Shown here: positions 4,601 to 24,600 of the stretch, one piece after another
Numbering within the stretch: the stretch's first letter is position 1
Layout of the letters: each line of letters begins with the position of its first letter
Assembly (NCBI GenBank): GCA_029953675.1
Contig: JAMWBK010000009.1
Location: forward strand, 558,001 to 622,000
From: Rhodosorus marinus CCMP1338
Taxonomy: Eukaryota; Plantae; Rhodophyta
Reading direction: 5' to 3'
DNA length: 64,000 bases
Notes under the pieces: model-generated
Databases searched by the model: none
What the model was told of the DNA's origin: nothing
The model's input: the letters and a program-made list of their open reading frames with translations, nothing else
Made by a program: the position numbers and the translations under genes

Positions 4601-6136
4601 ATGAGCGACATATCATCAACATAAACGACCAATATGAACTTCAAAGTTGAAAAATGCAAATGTTCACATCAAACGATCTCGAACCCATTTAAATTTCACG
4701 AACCCATCCCTCGAGGTCATCTCGTAGTGCCTCGGACCCAAACATCGTTGCCTTCCTTGACTCGTATTCTGAACCCAGTACTCTGGGGCTTGCTCCCCCG
4801 AGGAGGAAGAACTCCAAACTACACAAAAGAACCAGCCTCCTGAGTAAGGGCCCCTGAACTCCACCAAAGGCCTAAACCGAAGAAGAGATTGAGAGTACGA
4901 CCAACGAGCAAGTTGATGCCCATCGCACTCAGGCAATCAGATGACCCAACCACTGTCACTGAACCCAAAGACTTACAACAAGCTCAGCAAAAGCAGGGTC
5001 GCCGATGCAAAGGTGAATCCCCATTAATTCCACCGCTCGTAAAGGTTTTTACCAGAAATGTACCACTTATACTATGCACGATACGGTATCGTTTTTACCC
5101 CTAGGATGAGGAGATTCATCCCCTCACCTTAACCCCTGACCTCAGCACGAAGTACAAGCTCCGTCCAGCGTAGAAAAAAGAAAATGTACCGCTCCTGCAG
5201 ATTCTAAAATATTGAATAATCCAAAATTATTAACATATAGAGCGTATTTTTGGTATAAATATGAACCAATTCAAAGAAAAACTCTTAATTTACGTATTTC
5301 ATCCTTGTTCAGTGAACTCAAAACAGCTATGGGATATTTCATCATAAAACGATAATAATGTGCTTGGGGAACTGCTTGCACACTTTCATTCAGTTATTTC
5401 TTGTCTTGAAAACAAGAAATAACTGCGACTACCTTCTAGAATCACCCAATCATTCTGCACAATGCCTCCAGCATGACTCGATGAAAATCATAATAATTAA
5501 GGACTCTACTGCCCTTTTTTTCCGAAAGAGGATTTGAACATTACATATGATTGGATTAACTGCTATAAAATGCCATATAAAATTTACTGTACAGGATTTC
5601 TCTGAACATATTTTGTAAGACAAAGGCCGTCTATTGGGTTTTGGAAAGTAATTCTGACTCGTTTTGCCGGTGAAAGAGGTTTTGCTAAGGAGCTTAAAAT
5701 TTTCGGAATATGGGGTACTCAGATATTGGAAAAATAGAACCTTTTATGCAAGATTTCTCCCGTTCATAAAAGTTTCCATTTTATTGTATTTCTTGTACGG
5801 GAAAATTCTGTGAAAATTTTTCTTTGTTTTTGGTGATTTTTTGTTGGTTTTGGTAATATATGGAACGGGTTCAGGAGGGTGGGAGGAGTTGAGTTAAGCG
5901 GTGCTGGCCATTAGAGCCAGAGCGGGATATAGTGACGACTACTTTAGGGAGCAACCTGATGGGGGTATAGAAAATTTGGACAGAATTGTTTTGCTGGGGT
6001 AGGCTGAGGTGTATATGTACTGTGTTTGGATAGGGTGAGGGGGTGAGGTGTAGAAGAGGGAAGGCTGAAAGGGATTTTCGGGGAGGGGTGTATGTGGGAA
6101 GCTTGAGCGTTGACCTTTGTCAGAGGGAGTGTGGGA

Positions 6137-8285
6137 ATGATGGAGACTAGAATATGTATGATAGGAGCTCTGGTAGTTTTGGTTCTTTTGGGCGGTTCGA
6201 ATGGACTACCGTTGAAGCAAAATGTTGAGTTTATTGAGGCTGCGGTGAATGGCGTAAAGACCAGGAGGCTTCATTTCACGGAGGCCACTGAGGAGTCCAC
6301 TGATGCTACCGAATGGTTGTTTCAGAAGGAGCGAAGGGTTTCCTTCCAGGGGAGTACGAGAATTTTTAACGGTGAAGAAGCAAGGGATGGGGAGTTTCCT
6401 TACATTGCCGCGCTTGCCTTGTCTGCATTTGGCACCGTCGTTCCGCAGCCGTTCTGCACGGGAGTGTTGATTGACAATGACATTGTACTAACTGCCGCCC
6501 ACTGCGTGGCCGACCTCGAGGATTCCCCGCTGGAGTTCTCTGCGTGCATTGGAGACGACAACTTGAACGCTGGTAGAACCCGATGTTCACGGGTGACGGA
6601 CGCCATCATCTCGGACAACTACATCCCCAATTTGCTTGTGGACGGCTTTGACCTCGCCGTCCTCAAACTTGCGGAAACTATTGATGTGGATCCCATCGCG
6701 ATCAGCTTTGAAAGGCCTCCGAATGAGCAGCTGACGACAGCTGTTGGATATGGCCGATCGAGTCGGAGTGCACCAAGCACCGACGGAATTCTTCGATTTG
6801 CACAAACTCAGTACGTTGATAACGCGAACTGTAGAGTCCTTCGACAAAGTTTAGCGACCAGAGACGATAATCTTCTCTGCTCGGATGGAAACTTTGCCGG
6901 CGATGGCAGCACTGTCTGTAATGGGGACAGTGGTGGGCCCTTAATTGTTCGAGGAGCCAACCGCTCGGAAGACTACACCATCGGAGTTGCAAGCTTCATC
7001 ACTACAATTTCAGACGGTACGCAAGACCAGAAGCTTTCAAAAAGCGTCCTACGTCCAAGCGCGCTTCTAACTCCGTTCTCTTATCTTCTCCGCAGATTGT
7101 GATGATTCGTTCGAAAACGTTTACATGAGCATCTCTAGCACGGGACACGATGCTATGATCCGAGATGCAGTCAGTCAGTTCGGTGGGCGTATCATAGATG
7201 CAGCTGACAATGACACAACGCAAAGGGACGAGTGTCGTGCGAGTGAGCAAGAGTGCATGGAATTGGGAGATCTGATGTGCGTCGAGGGCACCCTGACGGA
7301 GGATTGCTGTGAGTCTGCTGGTACTGTTCTGGAATGCCTCGTACCGGTTGCCGAGGAGTGCGGTGATCTCCTCATAACCCAGAATGCGCAGGAAATACAG
7401 GATGCGTTGGCTGAGAGCAGCGTCTGTGGTGGATCGGGGGGGTCGGCGGGGTCAGGAGAAGTTCCTGAAGTCAAAGAATGCCCATCTAGTGAGTTGAGAA
7501 AGTGTGAGGATAGATTCGATGATTCTTGCTTCAATGGCCCAACGTTTCGGTGCTGTACAGACGCGAGCGAGGTTCTTGATTGTAAACGGCCGTTCATCGA
7601 GGAGTGCGAACTGGGACAAACTCTTCGTTCATTCGATGAATTTGAAGAGCTGTTCGAGGCAGTTTGCGCTGAGGTCCTGGCAGAAGGGCCTGATTCGTCA
7701 CAACCAGGGAGCGGAGACCCCACAGAGTCCGGTGCATGCTTCCCTGGAGACGCAAGCGTCGTTCTGGAGAGCGGGTTGGAGAAGCAGATATCCGATCTCG
7801 TAGAAGGAGACCGCGTCCTGGCTGCGAATGGAAAATACAGCGATGTAATTGGTTTCACGCACAAGATGGTGCAGGCTCAGTCCGAATTTGTTCACATAGT
7901 CGCTGGCAAGGAGTCGCTGAGACTGACTCCCGAACACTATATACCCGTCGGTGTGAACGGGCTTGTGCTCGTCGCTGCCAAGAGCCTCGAGGTCGGGGAC
8001 CTTGTCACGTTGGGCGATCAGACAACAATCAGAATATCTAGCATTAACCGCACTAAGGCTAACGGTCTGTATAATCCGGAGACCCTGGATGGAACTATTG
8101 TCGTTGATGGAATCCTAGCTTCAACATACACGCAGAACCTGAACCCCCGCATTGCGCGGTTGTTGCTGGCATTCCCAAGATTTGTGTATAGGGTTGGATA
8201 TAAGCATCCTCTCGGGTCTTTGTTCCATTCTACAATGCCCGAGTTCGTTTATCGGTATATGCCGAAAGGGAGTCCTGTCATGTAA
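6137..8285 (+). CDS. Secreted S1A (trypsin-fold) serine protease - 2x Cys-rich repeat - Hint/Hog autoprocessing domain, ~689 aa
   Basis: Exons 6137-7016 and 7096-8285. The 79-nt GT..AG intron 7017-7095 joins the two ORFs in frame and restores the protease C-terminus (GVASF...C...VY). Signal peptide, R/IFNG activation site, LTAAHC, DLAVLKL, GDSGGP. Hint domain: CFPGDA (Cys codon 7737), LTPEH, GLYNP...GTIVVDGILASTY. Confidence 0.9.
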
Positions 8286-9326
8286 TTAGTCCGACTGCGG
8301 CTTCGGGGGCTGGAAAATATGAAGTACTCGAAGCGATAAATGATAATTGCAAATTAAGCATTGTGAATGCCTCCTATGTTTGATATTTGTACTAACGCGG
8401 CCCGATGCACGCTAACATCCAGCAAATGCTCGAGATCAAAAGTCCAACGGTCTGTTGAGAAAAAAGAACCCACGATGCTTGCATTTGATCTACTTGCCTT
8501 CCGACTGCTTGGCACGTGCTTAGCACGAGGGCGATAGTTTGCCAACCCGAGGAAACCTTGCCCAAAGCAGCTTTTCTTTTCCAGAAAAACGATCAAAGCC
8601 CACAGCGACCATCTTCCCGCCAAGCCCTTGACTTGCTGTGTTTCCTTAATCCGCTGACAAACAAACAATAGCAACGCAGTCCAAAATGGTGGTGCTTCAA
8701 TGCAGCCCGACACTGTCAGTTGGCACCCCAACCAGCGCAGGATCTTACATAAAAACGATTAAAAAAGACCTCGCCTCTTCAACATACGACGTCGAGCTAA
8801 GAAATGTCACTTAACTCTCGAAAGAATCCCGTGGGTCGCGAACGTCGGCACGAGGGAAGGCAACCCTCAGGAGAAATCGAGCTTCCTGCCCCCCACCGAT
8901 ACCATGACAGTTTTCTAAAACGATCGCCCCATTGCCAAACAATGTCGTGCTCGGGTTTCCCCGGGCTTTGGCACGCCCAGCCAAAAGTATATTATATTAA
9001 AATAAAATTACTCATTAAAGAGCTCAATAAAAAACATTAACGTTCCTTATTCATATTTTTAACACAAAAACCAATTCCCAATAATTATATAACGTTAATT
9101 GTTCTAGAATTTCGAAACTTCGACCCCTATATATTACATTTTATTCATATTTTAAGGATATTTGAATAAAATAAACTCTATTCAAAGTATTTCACGTTCA
9201 GCCATTCCATTTTTTGAAATAATTATATCATCATAATATTTTCCGTTATTCAAGTTTTTTGTTCATCGGGTGATAGAGGAGATCGCGTTAGCTTAGTACA
9301 GACTTTCATGGAGAACGGGAAGCGGT

Positions 9327-9383
9327 GTTGGTGGTTGGGGAGGGTGCTGGGAGCTGCTCGGAACACCCTCCCCAACCACCAAC
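9327..9383. repeat. Perfect 20-bp inverted repeat (17-nt loop) inside a larger foldable segment
   Basis: GTTGGTGGTTGGGGAGGGTG (9327-9346) / CACCCTCCCCAACCACCAAC (9364-9383). Confidence 0.85.
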
Positions 9384-9889
9384 GCCTCCTCTGCGGTTGG
9401 AATGGTTCGCTCACATCCGAGCGGGTACACTAACTAGCAGGTTATACAGAAACTAATCCTCTCACCAAAGTTAAAAAAGAGGAATTTTTACGTTCAGGGA
9501 CCGCAAGCTCTCAGCATTCGCGATGGAGAGCACATCCATCCTAACCTGTCCCGGAGGAGGGAAAATGCCTAAGTGCCTTTCGAAAATCTTCATGATGTTT
9601 TCTCTATATAATTTTTAACACCCGCGAACTTGTCTTATATACTATTCTTCTAGATTTTCAACCGAAATTTCCTTCCCATTTGCAAAAATTGCGTATGATG
9701 TCATTGCGATGAAATCCTCTACAAAATTCCAAAAATAAAGATCATCCGGCTTCCGAGGGTGTTGCCGGGGGGGTGGGCGGGGGGTTTCTACGCCCCTTAA
9801 AAATAAACGGAAATGTGGACAGTGGGTAGGTTGCAACTCGTTCACTTCTTTTGATGGCCAACAAAACATTATCACCATACAATCTTTTC

Positions 9890-10099
9890 TGTCGAAAAAT
9901 AGATCTCTGAGCAGAGCTACAACTTGCTTTGCTCTACCCCTATCGAATTACCATTATACTGTTCTTCGACCCGGCCTGGAAAGCCGGCGTCGTTCTGCCT
10001 TTCCTTATCGTCTATCCCTTAAGCAGAATGTAATTAATCCGCCTACTATGCTATATAGAGGAGGGGGGTTGATCCCGCAAAACAACGAAACGGTCGACA
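9890..10099 (-). repeat. copia 3' LTR
   Basis: TGTCGA...TCGACA termini; direct repeat of 11222-11423; adjacent polypurine tract. Confidence 0.85.
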
Positions 10100-10950
10100 C
10101 TCCCCTTCCGGAGCTACCCCCACACTATCTATTCCTCGCTAAGCCCCAGTTGTGAACGCAATTCTTGAAATGCTTCCTTACCCAAGGGCTTTGTAAAAAT
10201 GTCCGCTAGCATTTCCTCAGTCGATATGTAGGCCGAGTCGCTTATGAGCGGTCGATGCCTGTATGGCACAACTCCTATGCGGACTCTCAGACACTACTAC
10301 CCTCAGATCCAGCTCGTACATCGAATCGTGCACGTACGCGTAGAAACCCGTGGTGCGTCTATTACTAAAAACTAACCTTTGGTAATCCTCATCTAATCTA
10401 TATCCATGTGGCAAAACCTTTCGCATTGAGATTAGATTCATTTCGGAGCGTTTTAAGTAGTAAACCTCCCCAAAAGTTATCTTCTTCCCATCCGGTGCTC
10501 CGTTGTCACCTCCCCCTTCTGCGTCGCGACTGCCGAGTGTCCGTTTGCAAAAGTGAAATGCACAGGCTCCGTCTCCTCTAGCGTCTCGAAGCAATTGACG
10601 TCGTTGACCATGTGCTCCGATCCCCCTGAGTCGATAAGCAGGTTAGTATCTACTGTCGTTTTCTCACTGCAGCGCTGTACTTCGGTCCTGATCCCGCTGC
10701 TCCGCTCCTTACAGTCTCTAATAAGGTGCCCCGGCTGCTTGCAGTTTAGGCAGGTCTTCTCCTTCCTGCACTCTCTGTAATCGTGTTCCGTCGTGTTACT
10801 GGTCCAACATTCCTGTTCCGGAGTCTGTTCTGCATTTCTCCTTCCGGCCGCCGCTGGAACTCCCACCGTTCCTTTGTGATACTTCTGCCAGACCGAGACC
10901 TCTTTGACAGGAGCCTGACATCTCGTCATAATTGATGATGTCCGTAGCCG

Positions 10951-15909: not shown

Positions 15910-16997
15910 CTATGACTTATCCTCTGACTCTTCTGAGACGGCCTTCGAAACGCCCACCTCTGCAGCTCTAAGAACGCGGTCGTTAATCATGTAGCCTTTC
16001 TTCGTGATGGAAACTATGATGCCCTCCTTAGTTCCGGGAATCTCGGACTCAAACAGAGCCTGGTGAACGTTCGGATCAAATTCATCTCCCTCTGCAGCAA
16101 ACTCCTTGATCTCGTTGCTTCGAAACACTCGCATCAGTTCTTTTCTCTACGCGTTTCGTAGGGGATCGAAGCAAGGTAATCGAGTTGAGAATCTTCCCAA
16201 GAGAGCAAAGGCCCGGAGATGCACCATACCGTCATTTCAACACCAATGTATAACTCCTTCAGGTATTTGTCTCCTCCTTCCAGCTTCTCAGCTGGGATTG
16301 CACCCAAAGCCCGGTTAAGATTATCCGCCACCTGCAAAATTGTACAGAATTCGTCAGCATTTGGCAAGACTGGTTGCGAAAGGCCTAAACAAAGGTGGCG
16401 TACCTCAAGGAGTGATTTCGCAAACTTCGTTATGCCGTACTGATGCGCGTTTGCGACATCACGCTTTGCAATCATTCTTGTATTTTCCATATCTGCCAAG
16501 TACCTGATTCTCAGATCGTTCAGCTTTCCAATCTCCTCCTCCTTCTGAGCCAATTGAGCTTCCAAATCCGCAACTGTGGAACTGTCTCCAGCGGCCGTGC
16601 CGTCGCTTGCTTGTGCTCCTATCGACAAGATCAGACACTCGTCGTAAACAAATGCTATCTGCGGAGCACCCTTATGATGCCTCCCATCAACTCCACTAGA
16701 TCGCAGAGAAAAAAACTGAAGATCCTTACCGTTTGCTTTCGATGCGCTCGAGTCCTCTAGATCTTCCAGATTTCCGAGATCCTCCTTCGTCTCAGATTCT
16801 TCTTCCGATTTTCCCGCAAACCTCGTAGGAGAAGATCCAAAACTTCTTCTACTCAATTGAACGCTCTCAAAGGAATTAATTCTCGTCCCGCTTCCCAGAC
16901 CGAGGCTTCTACACCCTCCCACGTGGTGCACGGACGTAAATCCTCGATCCAATGCTCGCCAACGTAATCCTCTCATCAAAACGCGTACGGTACTCAT
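15910..16997 (-). CDS. grpE: GrpE nucleotide exchange factor, probably mitochondrial (Mge1)
   Basis: LADMENTR...A..YGITKFAKSLLEVADNL, FDPNVHQA, KGYMINDRVLRAAEVGV. Introns 16619-16729, 16332-16403 and 16147-16229 keep frame. Arg/Ser-rich presequence. Confidence 0.93.
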
Positions 16998-18879
16998 CTT
17001 TCTTACTATCCGCCAAATAAACAATCCCCTAACTAGTCACCTTCAAACCTCAAGCAGCCCGCGAAACAACCTCCCAAGATCTCTCCAATCAATGATCCAC
17101 GTCCTCAAAACTCTTCTAGCTTGGAAAAATCCGTCCCTTATCTTCTTCTCCTTTTAATTCCCTTCCAAAATGTAAAAAAAAAATCAGAGAGTCAGTTCCT
17201 TCACATTAAGTACACAAAGTTTCCATTCGCCTTCCCCCCACCCTCAAACAAGCCCACCCGCCAAATCCCCTCTCCTTCTCCCTAAAGCCATATAAATATC
17301 TCTTCGATCCTCCACAGCAAATTTCGGCTGTCATAGATCAACTCAGGGTTAGCGTTAGCTTTCACGCAAGCAAAAACGCCCCCTTCCGAAAGGAAAACTA
17401 ACCTCTGAGAAACATCTAAAAAATAAGAATCTGTGGACATCCCCGGCTCAATGTCATCTAAATACCCAGTTTTCCTTTTTTTCAATTTTTTAGTTGCTTA
17501 GAAAGCACGACGCTCGATAACATTGGCCAAGACCTGCTGGAAGCAGATTCATATGTGGCCCCTCTGCATTTTTTTCGTGTCTTTCTTGTGTTTAATATTT
17601 CTTTAGTATTTAAAGTTATTATGGCGATTGTTGGATTTCAGGTAACCCGTAGTTAAAAAGTCGAAGGATATTTTGCTCGAGAGGCCCGTTTGATTTGGTG
17701 CTAAAAAAGATAGGGGGCTCATAGCTTTGTCACCACGAAATTATTCATAATATGAAAATAAATAGGGGGTCTATTTTGCTAAATGTGAACGGGGACTACT
17801 CGTGTGGTTGTGGATATGTGCGCCAATCGGTACGATTATCTTTGACATAAGTGTCCATTGGCTGACTAGCCTATTGGCGGGGAAAATAATTGGTGAAACT
17901 TTCTGTAAGTAGAAGATACTGTGGTGTTGATTAGTGAATTAATTTAATATCTATCAGAATATGGGATATTCAACAGAAATAATCCAATAAAGAATGGTTT
18001 TGCATGCCAAATTGGAGGGAAAGTACGATATAAGTACTTGATTGGTTCAAAGGTGTCCATTGAGAAGATTTGCAAGGAAAATGGATGACGTTTCACAATC
18101 GAAGCGCCGGAGATTCGTGTTGAGATCAAAGTCAATGATATTGGACGTATTGGGGATGACGATGAGCATTCTTGTGTAGACGGTTGGAATCCGTCTTCGC
18201 GTTGAAAGCGTTTTGTTTATAGAACTTCTTCATGCGGAGACTCTCTCAATCGAACGCTTCTAATTCGGCTCGCTCGCTCACTCCATTGGTGCTCTATTGT
18301 CTGATGTCGACGATGCTTGGAGAACGTTGTTTGGGAAGTTGTTTTTGTTCGCCGTCCTTACGCAGCACTGTTGAGGCCTCGGGCAGTTCCGAATTTGAGG
18401 CATCAGTGTTACAGGCTAGTGAGGGATTGTCCATCTCCCAAAATAGTTATGTTTTCATCATGTGAATGGTTATTTAGTTGTCCTGAGGTCGTAGAAGCCT
18501 CTTCTTGCTTGGAAAATGCACGAGCAAGGTTTTCCTGCCTGCCCACTGAACTCTGCAAAGTTCACTCCTCGTACTCAGCTCCAGTAGGAAACCATATTTA
18601 AAGGTATCAGATTTCAATATGTCCATTGTCGCGAGTGCAGATAATCTCATAGGCTCACTTTCATCCCCACCTCATTTCGCAAAGTTCGAACAAAGTTGCC
18701 GCGGCCGCGGCAAATAGCATCTGCACCTCCTGCTATTTCCGGGTCCAAATATTTCATGCCACCCATCAGCGCCTAGAAGAGCTTCTTGATCAGGGTCATT
18801 TGACTAAGGATAAATGAGAGCTGGTGCTTTCTGATGCTTCGTGCACTTTTGTCCATAAAGTCCTCCCGTTACTCACGCC

Positions 18880-20547: not shown

Positions 20548-23500
20548 ATGGCAACTCTCTCGATTCCCCAACAAGACCAATAAGACGGCCGGCGCGACTA
20601 CGTCAGGATCGAGACGTTTCTGGCGTCATTGCGCGGCTATCTCGAGTTCCACACAGTCGCCAATGCCGACCGGCAGTCGGTCCGGTACGCGGGCCTCTTC
20701 CTTAAGAACCAGGCTCAAACCTGGTACCAGGGTCTCGTCCGAGGACTGGACGGCATACCGGAGACCCTCGAATCCCTGGACGTGTTCGAGGCAGCGTTAC
20801 AGACCCAGTTCCAGCCGCACGACCATATCGAGCGGGTCCGAACGAAACTCCGAAGCGCCCGCGAACGGGGCCCCAGCGTTGCACGGTTTGTCGACTACCT
20901 CGACGAACTATTTATTTGGCTGCGCGCAAACATCAGCGACTCGGAGAAGCTGGACCGCTTCAAAGCGGGCTTGACGGGTCAAGAGCGAGACTTCCACTTT
21001 TACAGTCGACCCCGTACCTACGATGAAGCCAAGGAGCTCAGCCTGGCTGGTGCGCAGGACTCTCCAACGGGGACCACGAAGTCGCCACCGGATCGACCCC
21101 GAAGAAAATCCCAAACAGCCTCGCCGCGACGACCTCATACACTGCGCATGGTGCGCCGCGGGGAGGGGCACATGCAGAAGGACTGCCCAGAGCGGTGGCT
21201 TACCTCCTGGCAGAGGTGGAGCGCTTGTCACAGATCCAGGAAAACTAAAGGACTCCGGACGAGGGATGCCGTCCATGAGTCAACCGACCCGCATCCCACC
21301 TACCATCGAACTGCGACGACGGGTAATCTGCTAACAGCGGAAGGATCAATCGCGGGCAGACCAGTGGAGTGTTTAATAGACACTGGGGCTATCACAGCGA
21401 TCCGCGAAGATGTGGTGGACGAGATCATTTTACCACGACACCCGGATCCACGGACATATGGGCTGGCCGTTGACGACACAACCGTCACAAACCCGAGCTC
21501 GACGACAACGACGCTCACTCTAAACGGCACAACGTTTGAAACCACGCTACGGGTTTTCAAGAATCTAAGCCACGATGTGTACATTGGCCTTGACTTCTTA
21601 ACGCACCATGGGTTGGCGTTAGAATGCGGCACGGAACCAGAATACTTAATCAAGCGCGAAGATATCAGCCGGGGTCTACATCGACTAGAAAAGGAAGCCG
21701 AAATGAAGGCAGAAGATCCAGGCTTACAAGGAATCACAGTCATGGAAGCTGAGGAGGAGATAGGGGACAAGCACACCGACGACGGGAATACGGGGTTCGG
21801 TGCTGTCCTCAGAAAGGAGTTCCCGGATGTGTTCAAGGAGAAGTTGCTGGTGCCGCCAAAGGAACGGGAGAAATACGCGCTCCACATCACCTTAGAAGAC
21901 GGGGCACGAGCTCCAGCACAAAGACCATACCCGATGTCCTTCGTCGATCGTGAAGAGCTGCAGAAGGAGTTAAAGGACCTGGAAGAGCAGGGCTTCGTAT
22001 CTCGCAGTAGAAGTCCCTGCGCCGCGCCTGTGCTGTACGTCGATAGGAAAGACGGAGGGCGCGACGCCTGTGCGTAGGCTACCGCCGGCTGAACAAAATC
22101 ACCGTAAGGGAAAGGACGACTCCGCTAAGATTCGAGGAGCTCATGGACGCGTTGAGTAACGCCCGGGTGTGCACAACGTTAGATCTCCGGTCCGTCTACT
22201 GGCAACTTCCTATTGAGCCATCATCACGGGAAAGACTGCGTTCACGACGTGCTTTGGACAGTACCAGTGGAATGTCATGCCGTTTGGGTTGAAGAATGCG
22301 CCCTCGGTGTTCATTCGCTACCTGACGGATGTATTTTAGGTAGCTAACCTTATCAACGAATGCGTGGTGTTGTACGTCGACGATACCCTGATTTACTCGG
22401 CGACTTAGGAGGACCACGAAAAAGATGTCCGACGGGTATTACGACGACTAGAGCAGCATCAACTAGTCGTCAAACATTCGAAGTGCCAGTTCGGAGTACG
22501 TCAAGTTTGCTACTTAGGTCAAATCTTGGCGGGAGGCACTCGTCGTCCCGATCCAAAGGTGGAGGCCATTCAGGGTTGGAAGGCCCCAACCACTGCCAAG
22601 GAAGCACGGGCATTCATGGGCTTCGCAAATTTTCTACGGCCGTTTGTTCCCCGCTTTGCGCAAGTAGCTGCACCACTTCACGCACTAACCAAGAAGGATC
22701 AGCAGTGGAAATGGCACCAGGAGGAGCAACACACCTTCGACGAACTAAAACGTGCATATCACCCACCATAACTCTGTATGTGGGCGACCCGACGCTCCCT
22801 TTCATTGTTCAAGTGGATGCAATTGACGCGGGTATCGGCGGGTTCTCTTTCAAACGCGGCAAGACCAGGAGGTGCCAGTGGCGTATATGTCGCGAGTATT
22901 CAACACAACGGAAAAGCGATACAGCACCTACGAGAAAGAATTGCATGCCATCGTACTGGCACTACGACAATGGTCAATATACCTCGATGGGCAACATTTC
23001 ATCGTACGTACGGACCATAACCCGCTGCGTTTCCTCCAAACGCAAACGACATTGACTCGACGGCAAGCAAGATATGTTAAATTGCTATTGCTGTATTCCT
23101 TCGAGATTGAATACATACGAGGGAAAATTAACCTAGCGGACGCGCTGAGCCGGGACTACTCGGGGCAACGCGATCCATACGCGTTACCCCGAGTACGGAT
23201 TGGCATGTGGATTACCTGGCAGACCCAGAGTTCACCACGCAATTCCAGAGGCCTGGCCAGTTTGAAGGCTTTCAACGAAAAAAAAGAAAAAAAAAGGCCT
23301 ACTCTTACTACATGCGAGGCTCTGTGTACCCGACAACCCCGTCAACGAAGTCATCGATACGCACCATACATCAGTACCAGCAGAACGTTTTGGGGCACAA
23401 GCTACGTGTCGCCTGATACGCCGACGTTACTACTCGCCGAACATGCGGAAGGACGTACTACAACGCGTACAACAATGCGAGGTATGCGCACGTGAACAAC

Positions 23501-24600
23501 CACTGCGGCGAAACCAGGGCGAGCTGCAACCCCTGGCCATACCGCAAAACCGCGCCATACCACAAAACCGCGCCATACCGCAAAACCGCGCGATCGACTA
23601 GACCATGGATTTTATGACCGGATTTCCCAATGTCGCGGGACATGATGCTCATCTGGTTGTGGTTGACCGACTCACGAAGTTCGCCGTATTCATTCCAACG
23701 ACGCAGACCGTGACCGCAGAAGAGGTGACAACGCTTACTGTGAAATCTATTGTAGAATTGTTCGGACTACCCCCGAGCTTCGTAACAGATCGTGACAAGG
23801 TCTTCACAGCGACCTTCGGGCGACACCCTCTACGATTGATGGGGGTTCAACAGCTGCTCTCTACCGCGTACCACCCCGCAACGGATGGACAGACGGAACG
23901 GGTGAATCAGACCCTACAAATGATGCTCAGATGCTGTTGTAACAGTCAAACATGGATGCAGCGTCTACCCCTTCTTCAGCTGGCCTACAACAACCAGACT
24001 TCGGCCATTACGGTATTCACCGTATTTTCTGTTAACCGGAGGGCATCCGCGTTTGAACTCGCCAGTCAAACGTCTCAACCCCAACCCCGACGATTAGCAA
24101 TCTTCCCGACTGCTTTCGTGAAAGGACAACAGCAAATTCTTGCAGACGCCCGCAAGTCCATAGCCCTGGCGCAGGAGTTATATACTGACCACGCGAATTC
24201 ACAGCGTCACACGAAGGTGTTCAACGTTGGTGGCAAGGTCTATTTGTCCGCGCGCAACCTGCCTTTGGAACCCCCTTATTCGGTGTCAACCTAGCTGGTT
24301 AGGCCCCTTTCCAATTATCGAAAAACATTTGGACGTCGAGTACACGCTACAGTTACCTGATGAAATCCGGTTACACCCGACATTTCATGTTTCCTTACTG
24401 AAGAGCGCACCGCCTTGGACAACTGAAACCCGACATATTCCCGTCCGAACCAATCTACATCCGACGCAACCTGTGTTATCGGTATTGAGCGTGCGTACTG
24501 ACGATGCAGGCACCCGCCAGTTTCTATGCTACCGCGAAAATGAATCGTGGACTGATGCTATTTGGCTCCCTGAATACGACCATCGGATACGCTGTCTCCA
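20548..24600 (+). pseudogene. gag-pol pseudogene of the gypsy element
   Basis: Domain order gag-PR-RT-RH-INT-chromo spread over several frames, with internal stops. Confidence 0.9.
23536..23589 (+). repeat. 18-bp tandem repeat x3 in the integrase region
   Basis: GCCATACC(G/A)CAAAACCGC x3. Confidence 0.9.

What the first reader, a model, noticed from the sequence alone, without database searches (positions are those of the whole stretch)
6137..8285. Secreted serine-protease zymogen fused to a hedgehog-type Hint/Hog autoprocessing domain
Seen: removing one 79-nt intron joins signal peptide + propeptide + R/IFNG + intact His-Asp-Ser triad (TAAHC, DLAVL, GDSGGP) + Cys-rich repeats + a Hint domain. 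The Hint domain starts at G-A/C-F-P (Cys ~508), has the block-B TxxH (LTPEH), ends GTIVVDGILASTY, and is followed by a sterol-recognition-like helix (ARLLLAFPRFVY). Known: Hog domains cleave at the Cys via an N-S acyl shift and transfer the N-terminal part to a nucleophile (cholesterol in hedgehog); Hog proteins are reported in red algae and protists. Inference: a doubly processed precursor in which an extracellular protease is self-cleaved and possibly covalently attached to a sterol, lipid or wall polymer. The residue matching the hedgehog cholesterol-activating Asp (FMDR) reads FTHK, so the adduct may differ. The S1 pocket reads T-V-C (not D-S-C), implying non-tryptic specificity. I do not recall an S1A protease-Hog architecture being characterised.
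Basis: partly seen in the sequence, partly recalled or inferred. Interest (0 to 1): 0.8.

Follow-up and report, generated by a model that had tools for sequence, protein, structure and literature searches.

The report
Red-algal serine protease fused to Hog domain
This is a real, expressed gene of the red alga Rhodosorus marinus that joins a secreted trypsin-family protease to a hedgehog-type self-cleaving domain; the combination recurs across red algae, is unstudied, and probably cuts the protease free and may tether it to a membrane sterol.

Summary
Window 6137-8285 (+), with a 79-nt intron at 7017-7095, encodes one 689-aa protein. It is 100% identical to the annotated hypothetical protein NDN08_006619 of Rhodosorus marinus. 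A transcript from another R. marinus strain is colinear and lacks exactly those 79 nt.

Parts, in order:
- signal peptide and propeptide
- S1A protease with an R|IFNG activation site, an intact His/Asp/Ser triad and a non-tryptic pocket (Thr189, Ile216, Asn226)
- two 8-Cys helical repeats and a linker
- Hog domain: Cys508-Phe, T-x-x-H, and an SRR-like helix

The architecture is not unique. At least 24 further 50%-identity clusters carry Trypsin+Hog. They include three more R. marinus paralogs in the genome annotation, two Porphyridium species and florideophyte-type contigs. I found no paper describing it.

Two hedgehog catalytic residues differ. The general-base Asp is His (122 of 124 related Hogs). 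Cys143 is Thr (103 of 124). The engineered Asp-to-His hedgehog variant keeps cholesterolysis, so FTHK does not argue against a sterol adduct. The missing Cys143 is the real mechanistic question.

Most likely the Hog domain cleaves at Ala507|Cys508 in the ER. Sterol esterification of the protease fragment is plausible but unproven. Verdict: a new variant of a known kind (Hog proteins), of moderate interest.

The parts
6137..7016 (+). Exon 1: start codon (ATG ATG; NCBI model starts at the second ATG, 6140) through residue 293 and the first base of codon 294
   Evidence: the MMETSP orthologue also starts MM
7017..7095 (+). 79-nt spliceosomal intron (GTACGC ... TTCTAAC ... pyrimidine tract ... CAG)
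   Evidence: The transcript of a related strain lacks exactly these 79 nt. Removing them restores the frame.
7096..8285 (+). Exon 2: end of the protease domain, Cys repeats, Hog domain, stop codon TAA at 8283-8285
6137..6205 (+). Predicted signal peptide (residues 1-23, MMETRICMIGALVVLVLLGGSNG)
   Evidence: Hydrophobic N-terminus read from the sequence. Equivalent hydrophobic N-termini occur in most family members. No signal-peptide predictor was available.
6206..6361 (+). Propeptide (residues 24-75) ending in the activation site Arg75|Ile76 (STR|IFNG)
   Evidence: R/K-I/V is conserved across the family. It aligns to the mature N-terminus of elastase and trypsin chains.
6362..7190 (+). S1A (chymotrypsin-fold) protease domain, residues 76-325, interrupted by the intron. 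His122 (6500-6502), Asp172 (6650-6652), Ser265 (6929-6931), Thr at chymotrypsin position 189 (6911-6913).
   Evidence: Pfam Trypsin E=4.6e-30. Best PDB sequence match is elastase 1BRU. The AF2 model matches 1BRU with target-normalised TM-score (TMt) 0.84. Residue table.
7233..7427 (+). 8-Cys helical repeat 1 (Cys340-Cys404)
   Evidence: Internal repeat E=9e-9. The repeat family is found next to Hog domains in other proteins. It is helical in the AF2 models.
7479..7667 (+). 8-Cys helical repeat 2 (Cys422-Cys484)
7668..7736 (+). Acidic Gly/Ser/Pro linker ending in Ala507, the predicted C-terminal residue of the released protease fragment
   Evidence: pLDDT below 50 for residues 492-504. The residue before Cys is small or variable across the clade.
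7737..8135 (+). Hint module, residues 508-640. Cys508 (7737-7739), His549 at the hedgehog Asp46/Asp303 position (7860-7862), Thr571 and His574 of T-x-x-H (7926-7937), Thr637 at the hedgehog Cys143 position (8124-8126).
   Evidence: Pfam Hint E=4.5e-27. Residue-by-residue alignment to Drosophila HhC 1AT0/6TYY/6TD6. pLDDT about 90 or higher. Clade-wide conservation.
8136..8282 (+). SRR/ARR-like C-terminal tail (residues 641-689) with helix NPRIARLLLAFPRFVYRVG (8142-8198)
   Evidence: It aligns to Drosophila Hh residues about 402-421, the start of the SRR, and to Pfam Hint model positions up to 180/213. AF2 predicts a helix at 643-658 with pLDDT about 90. The A-H-x-L-L-x-P-x-R-x-L-Y consensus is conserved in the family.

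Best explanation
This is one expressed gene of Rhodosorus marinus. It encodes a secreted, doubly processed precursor.

1. The signal peptide takes the protein into the ER (inferred from sequence).
2. The C-terminal Hog domain makes an N-to-S acyl shift at Ala507-Cys508, assisted by Thr571 and His574.
3. A nucleophile then resolves the thioester. The most likely nucleophile is the 3-beta-hydroxyl of a membrane sterol, held by the SRR-like helix and activated by His549.
4. This releases a fragment of about 52 kDa (about 46 kDa after propeptide removal). The fragment is acidic and consists of the protease, two 8-Cys helical repeats and a linker. Its C-terminus would be lipid-esterified, so it stays on the cell surface or on vesicles. 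The 20-kDa Hog fragment is discarded.
5. Separately, the protease zymogen is activated by cleavage after Arg75. Its own pocket (Thr189, Ile216, Asn226; elastase-like, occluded) is not tryptic, so a different, Arg-specific protease probably does this.

What is shown: the gene model, the splicing, the domain order, intact catalytic residues, conservation of the family, and purifying selection.

What is inferred: ER entry, autocleavage, the identity of the nucleophile, membrane tethering, substrate preference and the activator.

My probabilities: single fused gene 0.97; Hog domain self-cleaves 0.8; the adduct is a sterol 0.45. The confidence given for this entry (0.5) is for the whole chain, including a lipid-type adduct.
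For: - Gene and fusion: ORFs plus intron give one in-frame 689-aa protein. It is identical to the annotated NDN08_006619. The orthologous MMETSP transcript is colinear and lacks the 79 nt.
- Domains: Pfam Trypsin and Hint both score far above their cut-offs. The AF2 model is confident over the protease and the Hog domain, and the protease part matches elastase with target-normalised TM-score (TMt) 0.84.
- Protease competence: Arg|Ile activation site, His57, Asp102, Asp194, Ser195, Ser214 and the Cys191-Cys220 pair are all present.
- Hog competence: Cys-Phe is present in 123 of 124 related Hog domains (the remaining one is a gap). The T-x-x-H His is invariant in all 124, and His at the general-base position is found in 122 of 124.
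- His as general base: the engineered D303H hedgehog variant retains cholesterolysis and accepts more sterols (PMC9163320, PMC8529194).
- SRR-like helix: it aligns to the Drosophila SRR start. Buerglin 2008 reports SRR motif K in red-algal Hogs (PMC2362128).
- Selection: dN/dS between the two strains is 0.19-0.40 in every segment, including the Hint module and the tail.
- Recurrence: the same domain order occurs in 24 further clusters, in Rhodosorus, Porphyridium and florideophyte-type contigs.
- Available nucleophiles: 3-beta-hydroxy sterols are reported for Rhodosorus sp. CS-210, mainly 24-methylcholesta-5,22E-dien-3-beta-ol (PMC12256458).
Against:
- Hedgehog Cys143 is required for autoprocessing in cells and forms a branched thioester; C143A and C143D block processing (PMC12054796). 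It is Thr here and in 103 of 124 relatives. The hedgehog mechanism therefore cannot be transferred unchanged.
- The SRR-like tail is short (49 aa). Only its first helix aligns to hedgehog.
- Signal-peptide cleavage and ER entry were judged by eye, not by a predictor.
- The S1 specificity call rests on three pocket residues only.
- The selection estimate comes from a single pairwise comparison.
Confidence: 0.5

Rival explanations
1. Cleavage only. The Hog domain forms the thioester at Ala507-Cys508, and water (or a small thiol) resolves it. The domain would then be a self-removing C-terminal pro-domain, for example a folding or ER-exit checkpoint. It would release a soluble protease with no adduct.
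For: - Thr replaces hedgehog Cys143, which PMC12054796 links to the transfer pathway.
- The SRR-like tail is short.
- Hedgehog precursors also undergo nucleophile-driven N-terminal cleavage with DTT (PMC12054796).
Against: - The SRR-like helix is conserved across the family and confidently predicted.
- The tail is under purifying selection, dN/dS 0.40.
- His at the general-base position is nearly invariant, which is hard to explain if only hydrolysis is needed.
Confidence: 0.25
2. Non-sterol adduct. The thioester (or a Thr637 oxy-ester intermediate) is resolved by another hydroxyl or amine. Candidates are a glycolipid, a cell-wall or mucilage polysaccharide, or another protein. The protease would then be covalently fixed to the extracellular matrix.
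For: - The adduct-recognition region differs from animal SRRs beyond the first helix.
- Buerglin 2008 coined 'ARR' because the adduct is unknown outside hedgehog (PMC2362128).
- The same Hog clade carries matrix-type cargos such as Spondin_N and pectinacetylesterase.
Against: - The helix that does align is the sterol/membrane-recruiting SRR helix 1 (PMC9163320).
- The D303H hedgehog variant still uses sterols (PMC9163320).
- No precedent was found in the literature searched.
Confidence: 0.15
3. The Hog domain is catalytically dead and stays attached, serving as a structural or membrane-associating C-terminal domain of the protease.
For: - Two hedgehog catalytic residues (Asp46, Cys143) are not conserved.
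- Some family members have also lost protease catalytic residues, so catalytic decay does occur in this family.
Against: - Cys-Phe is present in 123 of 124 relatives (one gap), and the T-x-x-H His is invariant in all 124. The 'non-hedgehog' residues His and Thr are themselves strongly conserved. This is the pattern of an active site, not of decay.
- dN/dS of the Hint module is 0.31.
Confidence: 0.07
4. Gene-model artefact: the protease and the Hog domain are two neighbouring genes, or the intron is not removed.
For: Without splicing, ORF 1 ends at 7102 and ORF 2 has an ATG at 7125.
Against: - A transcript of a related strain spans both parts and lacks exactly the intron.
- The unspliced protease would lack its C-terminal strand, helix and Cys220.
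- The same fusion is intronless in other red algae.
Confidence: 0.02

Closest known systems
Hedgehog C-terminal autoprocessing domain (HhC: Hint plus SRR; Drosophila 1AT0, 6TYY, 6TD6)
   Same: - Pfam Hint PF01079 match.
- Cys-Phe at the cleavage site after a small residue.
- T-x-x-H motif.
- Conserved ...G-T-I-V-V-x-x-x-x-A-S-x-Y end of the Hint module.
- First SRR helix (A-x-x-L-L-x-x-P-R).
- C-terminal position in a signal-peptide-bearing precursor.

   Different: - The cargo is an enzyme zymogen, not the Hedge signalling domain.
- The general base Asp46/Asp303 is His.
- Cys143 of SCYA is Thr.
- The tail after the first SRR helix does not align.
- No Patched/Smoothened context is implied.
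Non-hedgehog Hog proteins (nematode Warthog/Groundhog/Quahog, Monosiga Hoglet, red-algal and moss Hog ESTs of Buerglin 2008; Kelch+Hog of Cyanidiophyceae)
   Same: - Modular design: secreted N-terminal cargo plus a C-terminal Hog domain.
- Red-algal Hogs have motif J with Cys replaced by Ser, Thr or Asp, and they have motif K (PMC2362128).
- Function is unknown, with lipid modification suspected (PMC13353863).
   Different: - None of the described cargos is a protease or any other enzyme. For red-algal ESTs the upstream regions were unknown or matched nothing (PMC2362128).
- Here the cargo is an S1A zymogen plus an unclassified 8-Cys repeat.
Membrane-anchored S1A proteases of animals (GPI-anchored prostasin; type II transmembrane serine proteases). 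Functional analogy only, from general knowledge.
   Same: An S1A zymogen with an Arg|Ile activation site that would work at the cell surface through a membrane anchor. The Porphyridium purpureum family member is even auto-annotated 'Transmembrane protease serine 9'.
   Different: The anchor here would be a sterol ester added by a self-cleaving domain. It would not be a GPI anchor or a transmembrane helix. No homology beyond the protease domain.
Inteins and bacterial intein-like (BIL) domains
   Same: Hint fold and a first-step N-S acyl shift. A Thr at the hedgehog Cys143 position recalls the Ser/Thr/Cys +1 nucleophile that forms the branched intermediate in inteins (PMC12054796).
   Different: There is no C-extein. 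Only weak matches were found: Hom_end_hint E=0.17, and BIL 2LWY E=0.02. The protein ends 49 residues after the Hint module.

Membership tests
S1A chymotrypsin-fold serine peptidase (Pfam PF00089) | Profile match above the curated cut-off | tested here: met
   105.5 bits against a cut-off of 20.6, residues 76-296
S1A chymotrypsin-fold serine peptidase (Pfam PF00089) | Catalytic triad His57/Asp102/Ser195 in TAAHC / D-x-A / GDSGGP, plus Asp194 and Ser214 | tested here: met
   His122, Asp172, Ser265, Asp264 and Ser214-equivalent are all present
S1A chymotrypsin-fold serine peptidase (Pfam PF00089) | Zymogen activation site (basic residue | Ile/Val-x-x-G) after a propeptide | tested here: met
   STR|IFNG at 75/76. 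R/K-I/V is conserved in 21 of 24 family members that cover the site.
S1A chymotrypsin-fold serine peptidase (Pfam PF00089) | Double beta-barrel fold | tested here: met
   The AF2 model matches porcine elastase 1BRU: target-normalised TM-score (TMt) 0.84, rmsd 2.9, E=9e-17
S1A chymotrypsin-fold serine peptidase (Pfam PF00089) | Proteolytic activity and specificity | not testable with these tools
   Only inferred: Thr189, Ile216 and Asn226 suggest an occluded, non-tryptic pocket
Hog domain (Hint PF01079 plus SRR/ARR) of hedgehog-type autoprocessing proteins | Hint profile match above the curated cut-off, closer to hedgehog Hint than to intein, Vint or BIL profiles | tested here: met
   PF01079 scores 95.5 bits against a cut-off of 29.7. 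Vint, Hint_2 and Hom_end_hint fall below their cut-offs. The best PDB matches are Drosophila and human hedgehog.
Hog domain (Hint PF01079 plus SRR/ARR) of hedgehog-type autoprocessing proteins | Nucleophilic Cys as first residue of the domain (G/A/S|C-F) | tested here: met
   Ala507|Cys508-Phe509. Cys-Phe is present in 123 of 124 relatives; the remaining one is a gap.
Hog domain (Hint PF01079 plus SRR/ARR) of hedgehog-type autoprocessing proteins | Block B T-x-x-H | tested here: met
   LTPEH. Thr/Ser is present in 123 of 124 relatives and His in 124 of 124.
Hog domain (Hint PF01079 plus SRR/ARR) of hedgehog-type autoprocessing proteins | General-base Asp (Asp46/Asp303) | tested here: not met
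   His549 (FTHK), as in 122 of 124 relatives. It is the same residue as in the active engineered D303H variant 6TYY (PMC9163320).
Hog domain (Hint PF01079 plus SRR/ARR) of hedgehog-type autoprocessing proteins | Motif J Cys (Cys143 of S-C-Y-A) | tested here: not met
   Thr637 (ASTYT). Among relatives: Thr 103, Cys 11, Ser 3 of 124. This matches Buerglin's description of red-algal Hogs (PMC2362128).
Hog domain (Hint PF01079 plus SRR/ARR) of hedgehog-type autoprocessing proteins | Sterol/adduct recognition region after the Hint module | tested here: inconclusive
   A 49-aa tail. Its first helix aligns to Drosophila Hh 402-421 and to the Pfam model up to position 180/213. It is confidently helical. 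The rest does not align.
Hog domain (Hint PF01079 plus SRR/ARR) of hedgehog-type autoprocessing proteins | Autocleavage with transfer of the N-fragment to a nucleophile | not testable with these tools
   Needs biochemistry
Bona fide Hedgehog protein | N-terminal Hedge signalling domain | tested here: not met
   No such Pfam match. The N-terminal part is Trypsin plus Cys repeats.
Intein | Embedded in a host protein, with a C-extein and a C-terminal Asn plus a +1 nucleophile | tested here: not met
   The protein ends 49 residues after the Hint module. Intein profiles are insignificant.

The most novel reading that the evidence does not exclude
Red algae use Hog domains as a general, self-contained lipid-anchoring system for extracellular enzymes and matrix proteins. 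The cargos seen here are S1 proteases, Spondin_N, pectinacetylesterase and oxygenases. The chemistry would be a natural variant of the hedgehog reaction: a His general base and a Thr (oxy-ester) in place of the Cys143 branched thioester. The adduct would be the alga's own 24-methyl sterols. The window gene would then be the first sterol-anchored protease, and cholesterolysis-type protein lipidation would be an ancient eukaryotic secretory modification rather than a hedgehog peculiarity.
Probability: 0.3. Interest if true: 0.75.

Novelty: new variant of a known kind. Interest (0 to 1): 0.5.

Why it matters
Covalent sterol attachment to a protein has been demonstrated only for animal hedgehog ligands (general knowledge). 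What Hog domains do outside animals has been open since they were catalogued in 2008 (PMC2362128; still called 'unknown function' in 2026, PMC13353863).

This gene offers a tractable case:
- The cargo has an assayable activity (a protease).
- The Hog domain naturally carries the 'general-base swap' His and lacks Cys143.
- There are many natural relatives to compare, including some with Cys at position 143 and some that are pseudoproteases.

Showing sterol-dependent cleavage here would extend protein cholesterolysis beyond Metazoa. It would also test whether the Cys143 branched intermediate is essential to the chemistry, and it would define a new way to anchor proteases at a cell surface. If only hydrolysis occurs, it would instead define Hog as a self-removing pro-domain.

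Tried and rejected
1. Second copy in the window: tblastn of the three parts against the window found none. The paralog NDN08_006607 is 12 locus tags away on the same contig but lies outside the window.
2. Word-index homology search with the full protein or the full-length family alignment: beyond the window protein and its strain orthologue, it returned only generic trypsins, apart from one extra paralog, NDN08_006361. The exhaustive HMMER search was what revealed the family.
3. Word-index search with Hog-only profiles: it gave hundreds of short, mostly unnamed Hog proteins. Only Palmaria palmata was named. This confirms a large red-algal Hog expansion but adds little on Trypsin+Hog.
4. Fold of the 8-Cys repeat: AF2 gives a three-helix bundle (pLDDT 74), but Foldseek against the PDB gave nothing better than E=1.2 (MIT and RGM N-terminal bundles). 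There is no support for an nsLTP-, elicitin- or saposin-like lipid-binding fold, which I had considered.
5. Literature: no paper combines the Hog domain with a serine protease in the sense meant here. Zhao et al. 2019 (PMC7106946) is not held, so its content is cited through two reviews.
6. Single or multiple origin of the fusion: not resolved. Florideophyte-type protease domains are more distant from the query than some trypsin-only proteins. I built no tree, because the sampled set is biased by similarity to the query.
7. Active-site geometry in the model (Cys508, His549, Thr637 distances): model coordinates cannot be reached from the script tool.
Full report
**What is in the sequence**

Window 6137-8285 on the + strand holds two long ORFs in different frames: 6110-7102 and 7125-8285. 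Removing 7017-7095 joins them into one 2070-nt CDS of 689 aa. The removed 79 nt have GT...AG ends, a TTCTAAC branch-like site and a pyrimidine tract.

Pfam finds Trypsin (PF00089, residues 76-296, E=4.6e-30) and the hedgehog-type Hint module (PF01079, residues 502-658, E=4.5e-27). Both are far above their curated cut-offs. Intein, Vint and BIL-type Hint profiles stay below theirs.

**Origin and expression**

The spliced product is 100% identical to NCBI hypothetical protein NDN08_006619 of the red alga Rhodosorus marinus. That model starts at the second Met and sits on a 1.83-Mb contig. An MMETSP transcriptome protein of another R. marinus strain (P0002, 687 aa) is 83% identical over the full length. 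Its 2829-nt transcript contig aligns colinearly with the genome and lacks exactly the 79 nt. The intron and the protease-Hog fusion are therefore confirmed at mRNA level, although in a sister strain.

Nei-Gojobori dN/dS between the two strains, by segment:

| Segment | dN/dS |
|---|---|
| Signal peptide + propeptide | 0.26 |
| Protease | 0.19 |
| Cys repeats + linker | 0.36 |
| Hint module | 0.31 |
| C-terminal tail | 0.40 |

Every part is under purifying selection. This rests on one pairwise comparison.

**Anatomy** (689-aa numbering; window coordinates)

- Residues 1-23: hydrophobic signal-peptide-like N-terminus.
- Residues 24-75: propeptide ending STR|IFNG.
- Residues 76-325: S1A protease domain.
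  - His122, Asp172 and Ser265 form the triad. Asp194, Ser214 and the Cys191-Cys220 pair are present.
  - The S1 pocket has Thr189, Ile216 and Asn226.
  - The best PDB matches by sequence and by predicted fold are elastases (1BRU; Foldseek target-normalised TM-score 0.84).
  - An occluded, non-tryptic pocket is the reasonable inference. Activation after Arg75 then probably needs another protease.
- Residues 340-404 and 422-484: two copies of an 8-Cys repeat, 36% identical, E=9e-9, predicted helical.
- Residues about 485-507: a low-confidence acidic Gly/Ser/Pro linker ending in Ala507.
- Residues 508-640: Hint module. It aligns residue by residue with Drosophila HhC.
  - Cys508-Phe509 matches Cys1-Phe2.
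  - LTPEH matches the T-x-x-H motif (Thr69, His72).
  - GTIVVDGILASTY matches GTIVVNSVAASCY.
- Residues 641-689: the tail. It starts with a confidently predicted helix, NPRIARLLLAFPRFVYRVG. This helix aligns with the start of the Drosophila sterol-recognition region (6TD6 residues about 402-421).

**Two departures from hedgehog**

1. The general base Asp46/Asp303 is His549 (FTHK).
   - The top PDB hit is 6TYY, the engineered D303H variant.
   - That variant keeps structure and cholesterolysis and accepts additional sterols (PMC9163320, PMC8529194). D46H also autoprocesses in cells (PMC12054796).
- His at this site is therefore compatible with sterol transfer.
2. Hedgehog Cys143 (SCYA) is Thr637 (ASTYT).
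   - Cys143 was recently shown to be required for autoprocessing and to carry a branched thioester intermediate. C143A and C143D are inactive (PMC12054796).
   - Thr could in principle form an oxy-ester, as Ser/Thr +1 residues do in inteins. That is conjecture.

Both residues are features of the clade, not quirks of this gene. Counts among the 124 closest Hog domains:

| Position | Residue count |
|---|---|
| Cys-Phe at the start | 123 (one gap) |
| T-x-x-H His | 124 |
| General-base position | His 122 |
| Position 143 | Thr 103, Cys 11, Ser 3 |

This agrees with Buerglin's 2008 note that red-algal and moss Hogs have motif J with Cys replaced by Ser, Thr or Asp, and that they retain SRR motif K (PMC2362128).

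**The architecture is a family**

An exhaustive HMMER search of 1.84 billion representatives with the full protein was followed by my own domain parsing. Besides the window protein and its strain orthologue P0002, 24 further 50%-identity clusters among the top 150 carry Trypsin followed by Hog. They are aligned.

Named members and inferred sources:
- R. marinus paralogs NDN08_006607 (same contig, 12 locus tags away, outside the window), NDN08_004234 and NDN08_006361, plus MMETSP R. marinus transcripts.
- Porphyridium aerugineum.
- Porphyridium purpureum KAA8498291, auto-named 'Transmembrane protease serine 9'.
- A subfamily on metagenomic and Logan contigs that is florideophyte-derived. On contig L002 the neighbouring 40S ribosomal protein S4 falls in a 90%-identity cluster with Gracilariopsis chorda and Gracilaria domingensis S4.
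- Contig L004, which carries three Trypsin/Hint loci within 20 kb.

Variation within the family:
- The Porphyridium members and most florideophyte-type members keep Asp189 (tryptic); P0049 has Ser and P0135 has Asn there.
- The Rhodosorus-type members have Thr, Gly, Ala or Val at position 189.
- Three members (P0012, P0135, P0146) have lost His57 and Ser195 but keep the Hog domain.

The same Hog clade is attached to other cargos: Spondin_N in 5 proteins, and a dioxygenase, a copper monooxygenase, a pectinacetylesterase and pentapeptide repeats in one each. Most N-termini have no Pfam match. The clade is very large among short red-algal proteins, including Palmaria palmata.

The 8-Cys repeat recurs immediately upstream of Hog domains in proteins with and without a protease. 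It has no Pfam match and no significant PDB fold match.

**Most likely mechanism**

1. The precursor enters the ER through its signal peptide.
2. The Hog domain performs an N-S acyl shift at Ala507-Cys508.
3. A nucleophile resolves the thioester. This releases an acidic fragment of about 52 kDa (about 46 kDa after propeptide removal) and a 20-kDa Hog fragment.

I favour a membrane 3-beta-hydroxysterol as the nucleophile, for three reasons:
- The one part of the tail that aligns to hedgehog is SRR helix 1, the membrane/sterol-recruiting helix (PMC9163320).
- His at the base position is proven competent for sterol activation.
- Suitable sterols exist in the genus, mainly 24-methylcholesta-5,22E-dien-3-beta-ol (PMC12256458).

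The product would be a sterol-tethered surface protease. It would be functionally analogous to GPI-anchored or transmembrane S1A proteases of animals (general knowledge).

Probabilities: single fused gene 0.97; self-cleavage 0.8; sterol adduct 0.45. Rivals: hydrolysis only 0.25; non-sterol adduct 0.15; inactive Hog 0.07; gene-model artefact 0.02.

**Comparison with what is known, and novelty**

Hog proteins with diverse N-terminal cargos are a known kind. Examples are hedgehog, the nematode Warthog/Groundhog/Quahog proteins, Hoglet, the red-algal and moss ESTs, and Kelch+Hog in Cyanidiophyceae (PMC2362128, PMC13353863). Their function outside animals is still described as unknown.

I found no paper describing a protease, or any enzyme, as Hog cargo. 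Databases hold these proteins only as 'Peptidase S1 domain-containing protein' or 'hypothetical protein'.

The gene passes membership tests for S1A peptidases and for the Hint/Hog family at the profile, nucleophile and T-x-x-H levels. It fails two hedgehog-specific catalytic-residue tests (Asp46, Cys143). It is not a hedgehog (no Hedge domain) and not an intein. I rate it a new variant of a known kind, with interest 0.5. It is not unique and not mechanistically demonstrated, but it is a clean, testable entry point into what non-animal Hog domains do.

**Surroundings**

The neighbours are ordinary nuclear genes: GrpE-like, FHA-domain, gamma-tubulin complex component and amine oxidase. There are also LTR-retrotransposon remnants at 20.6-24.3 kb. 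Nothing links them functionally to this gene.

Noticed in passing
window 7233-7427 and 7479-7667: An unclassified 8-Cys helical repeat of about 63 aa (C-x6-7-C-x7-12-C-x8-10-CC-x8-C-x7-C-x~20-C). The same module lies directly upstream of Hog domains in other red-algal proteins, with or without a protease (1-3 copies). It has no Pfam match and no significant PDB fold match. It may be a Hog-associated domain worth defining.
   Followed up: partly
window 20629-24294: ORFs with retrotransposon gag, gag-aspartyl protease and integrase-core matches. These are LTR-retrotransposon remnants about 12 kb downstream of the gene.
   Followed up: no
L004:4432-5689, 8782-10278, 16146-17475: A florideophyte-type contig carries three Trypsin/Hint loci within 20 kb. 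Two of them are called as separate Trypsin and Hint ORFs, which could mean introns, frameshifts or pseudogenes. An Inositol_P gene lies next to the family both here and on L002.
   Followed up: no
Family alignment A2 (P0012, P0135, P0146): Three Trypsin-Hog family members have lost His57 and Ser195 (pseudoproteases) yet keep the Hog Cys-Phe and T-x-x-H. P0012 also has Lys instead of His at the general-base position and Cys at position 143.
   Followed up: partly
Family alignment A2, chymotrypsin position 189: Rhodosorus-type members have Thr, Gly, Ala or Val at position 189 and bulky residues at 216/226. The Porphyridium members and most florideophyte-type members keep Asp189, Gly216 and Gly226. 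This is a specificity switch within the family.
   Followed up: partly
Outside the window: R. marinus NDN08_006607, same 1.83-Mb contig: A Trypsin-Hog paralog with one 8-Cys repeat lies only 12 locus tags from the window gene. This suggests local duplication. Two further paralogs are on other contigs.
   Followed up: no
window 7175-7864 (- strand): A 229-aa antisense ORF overlaps the Cys-repeat and Hog coding region. No evidence suggests it is a gene, and it is most likely a by-product of the composition of the sense CDS.
   Followed up: no
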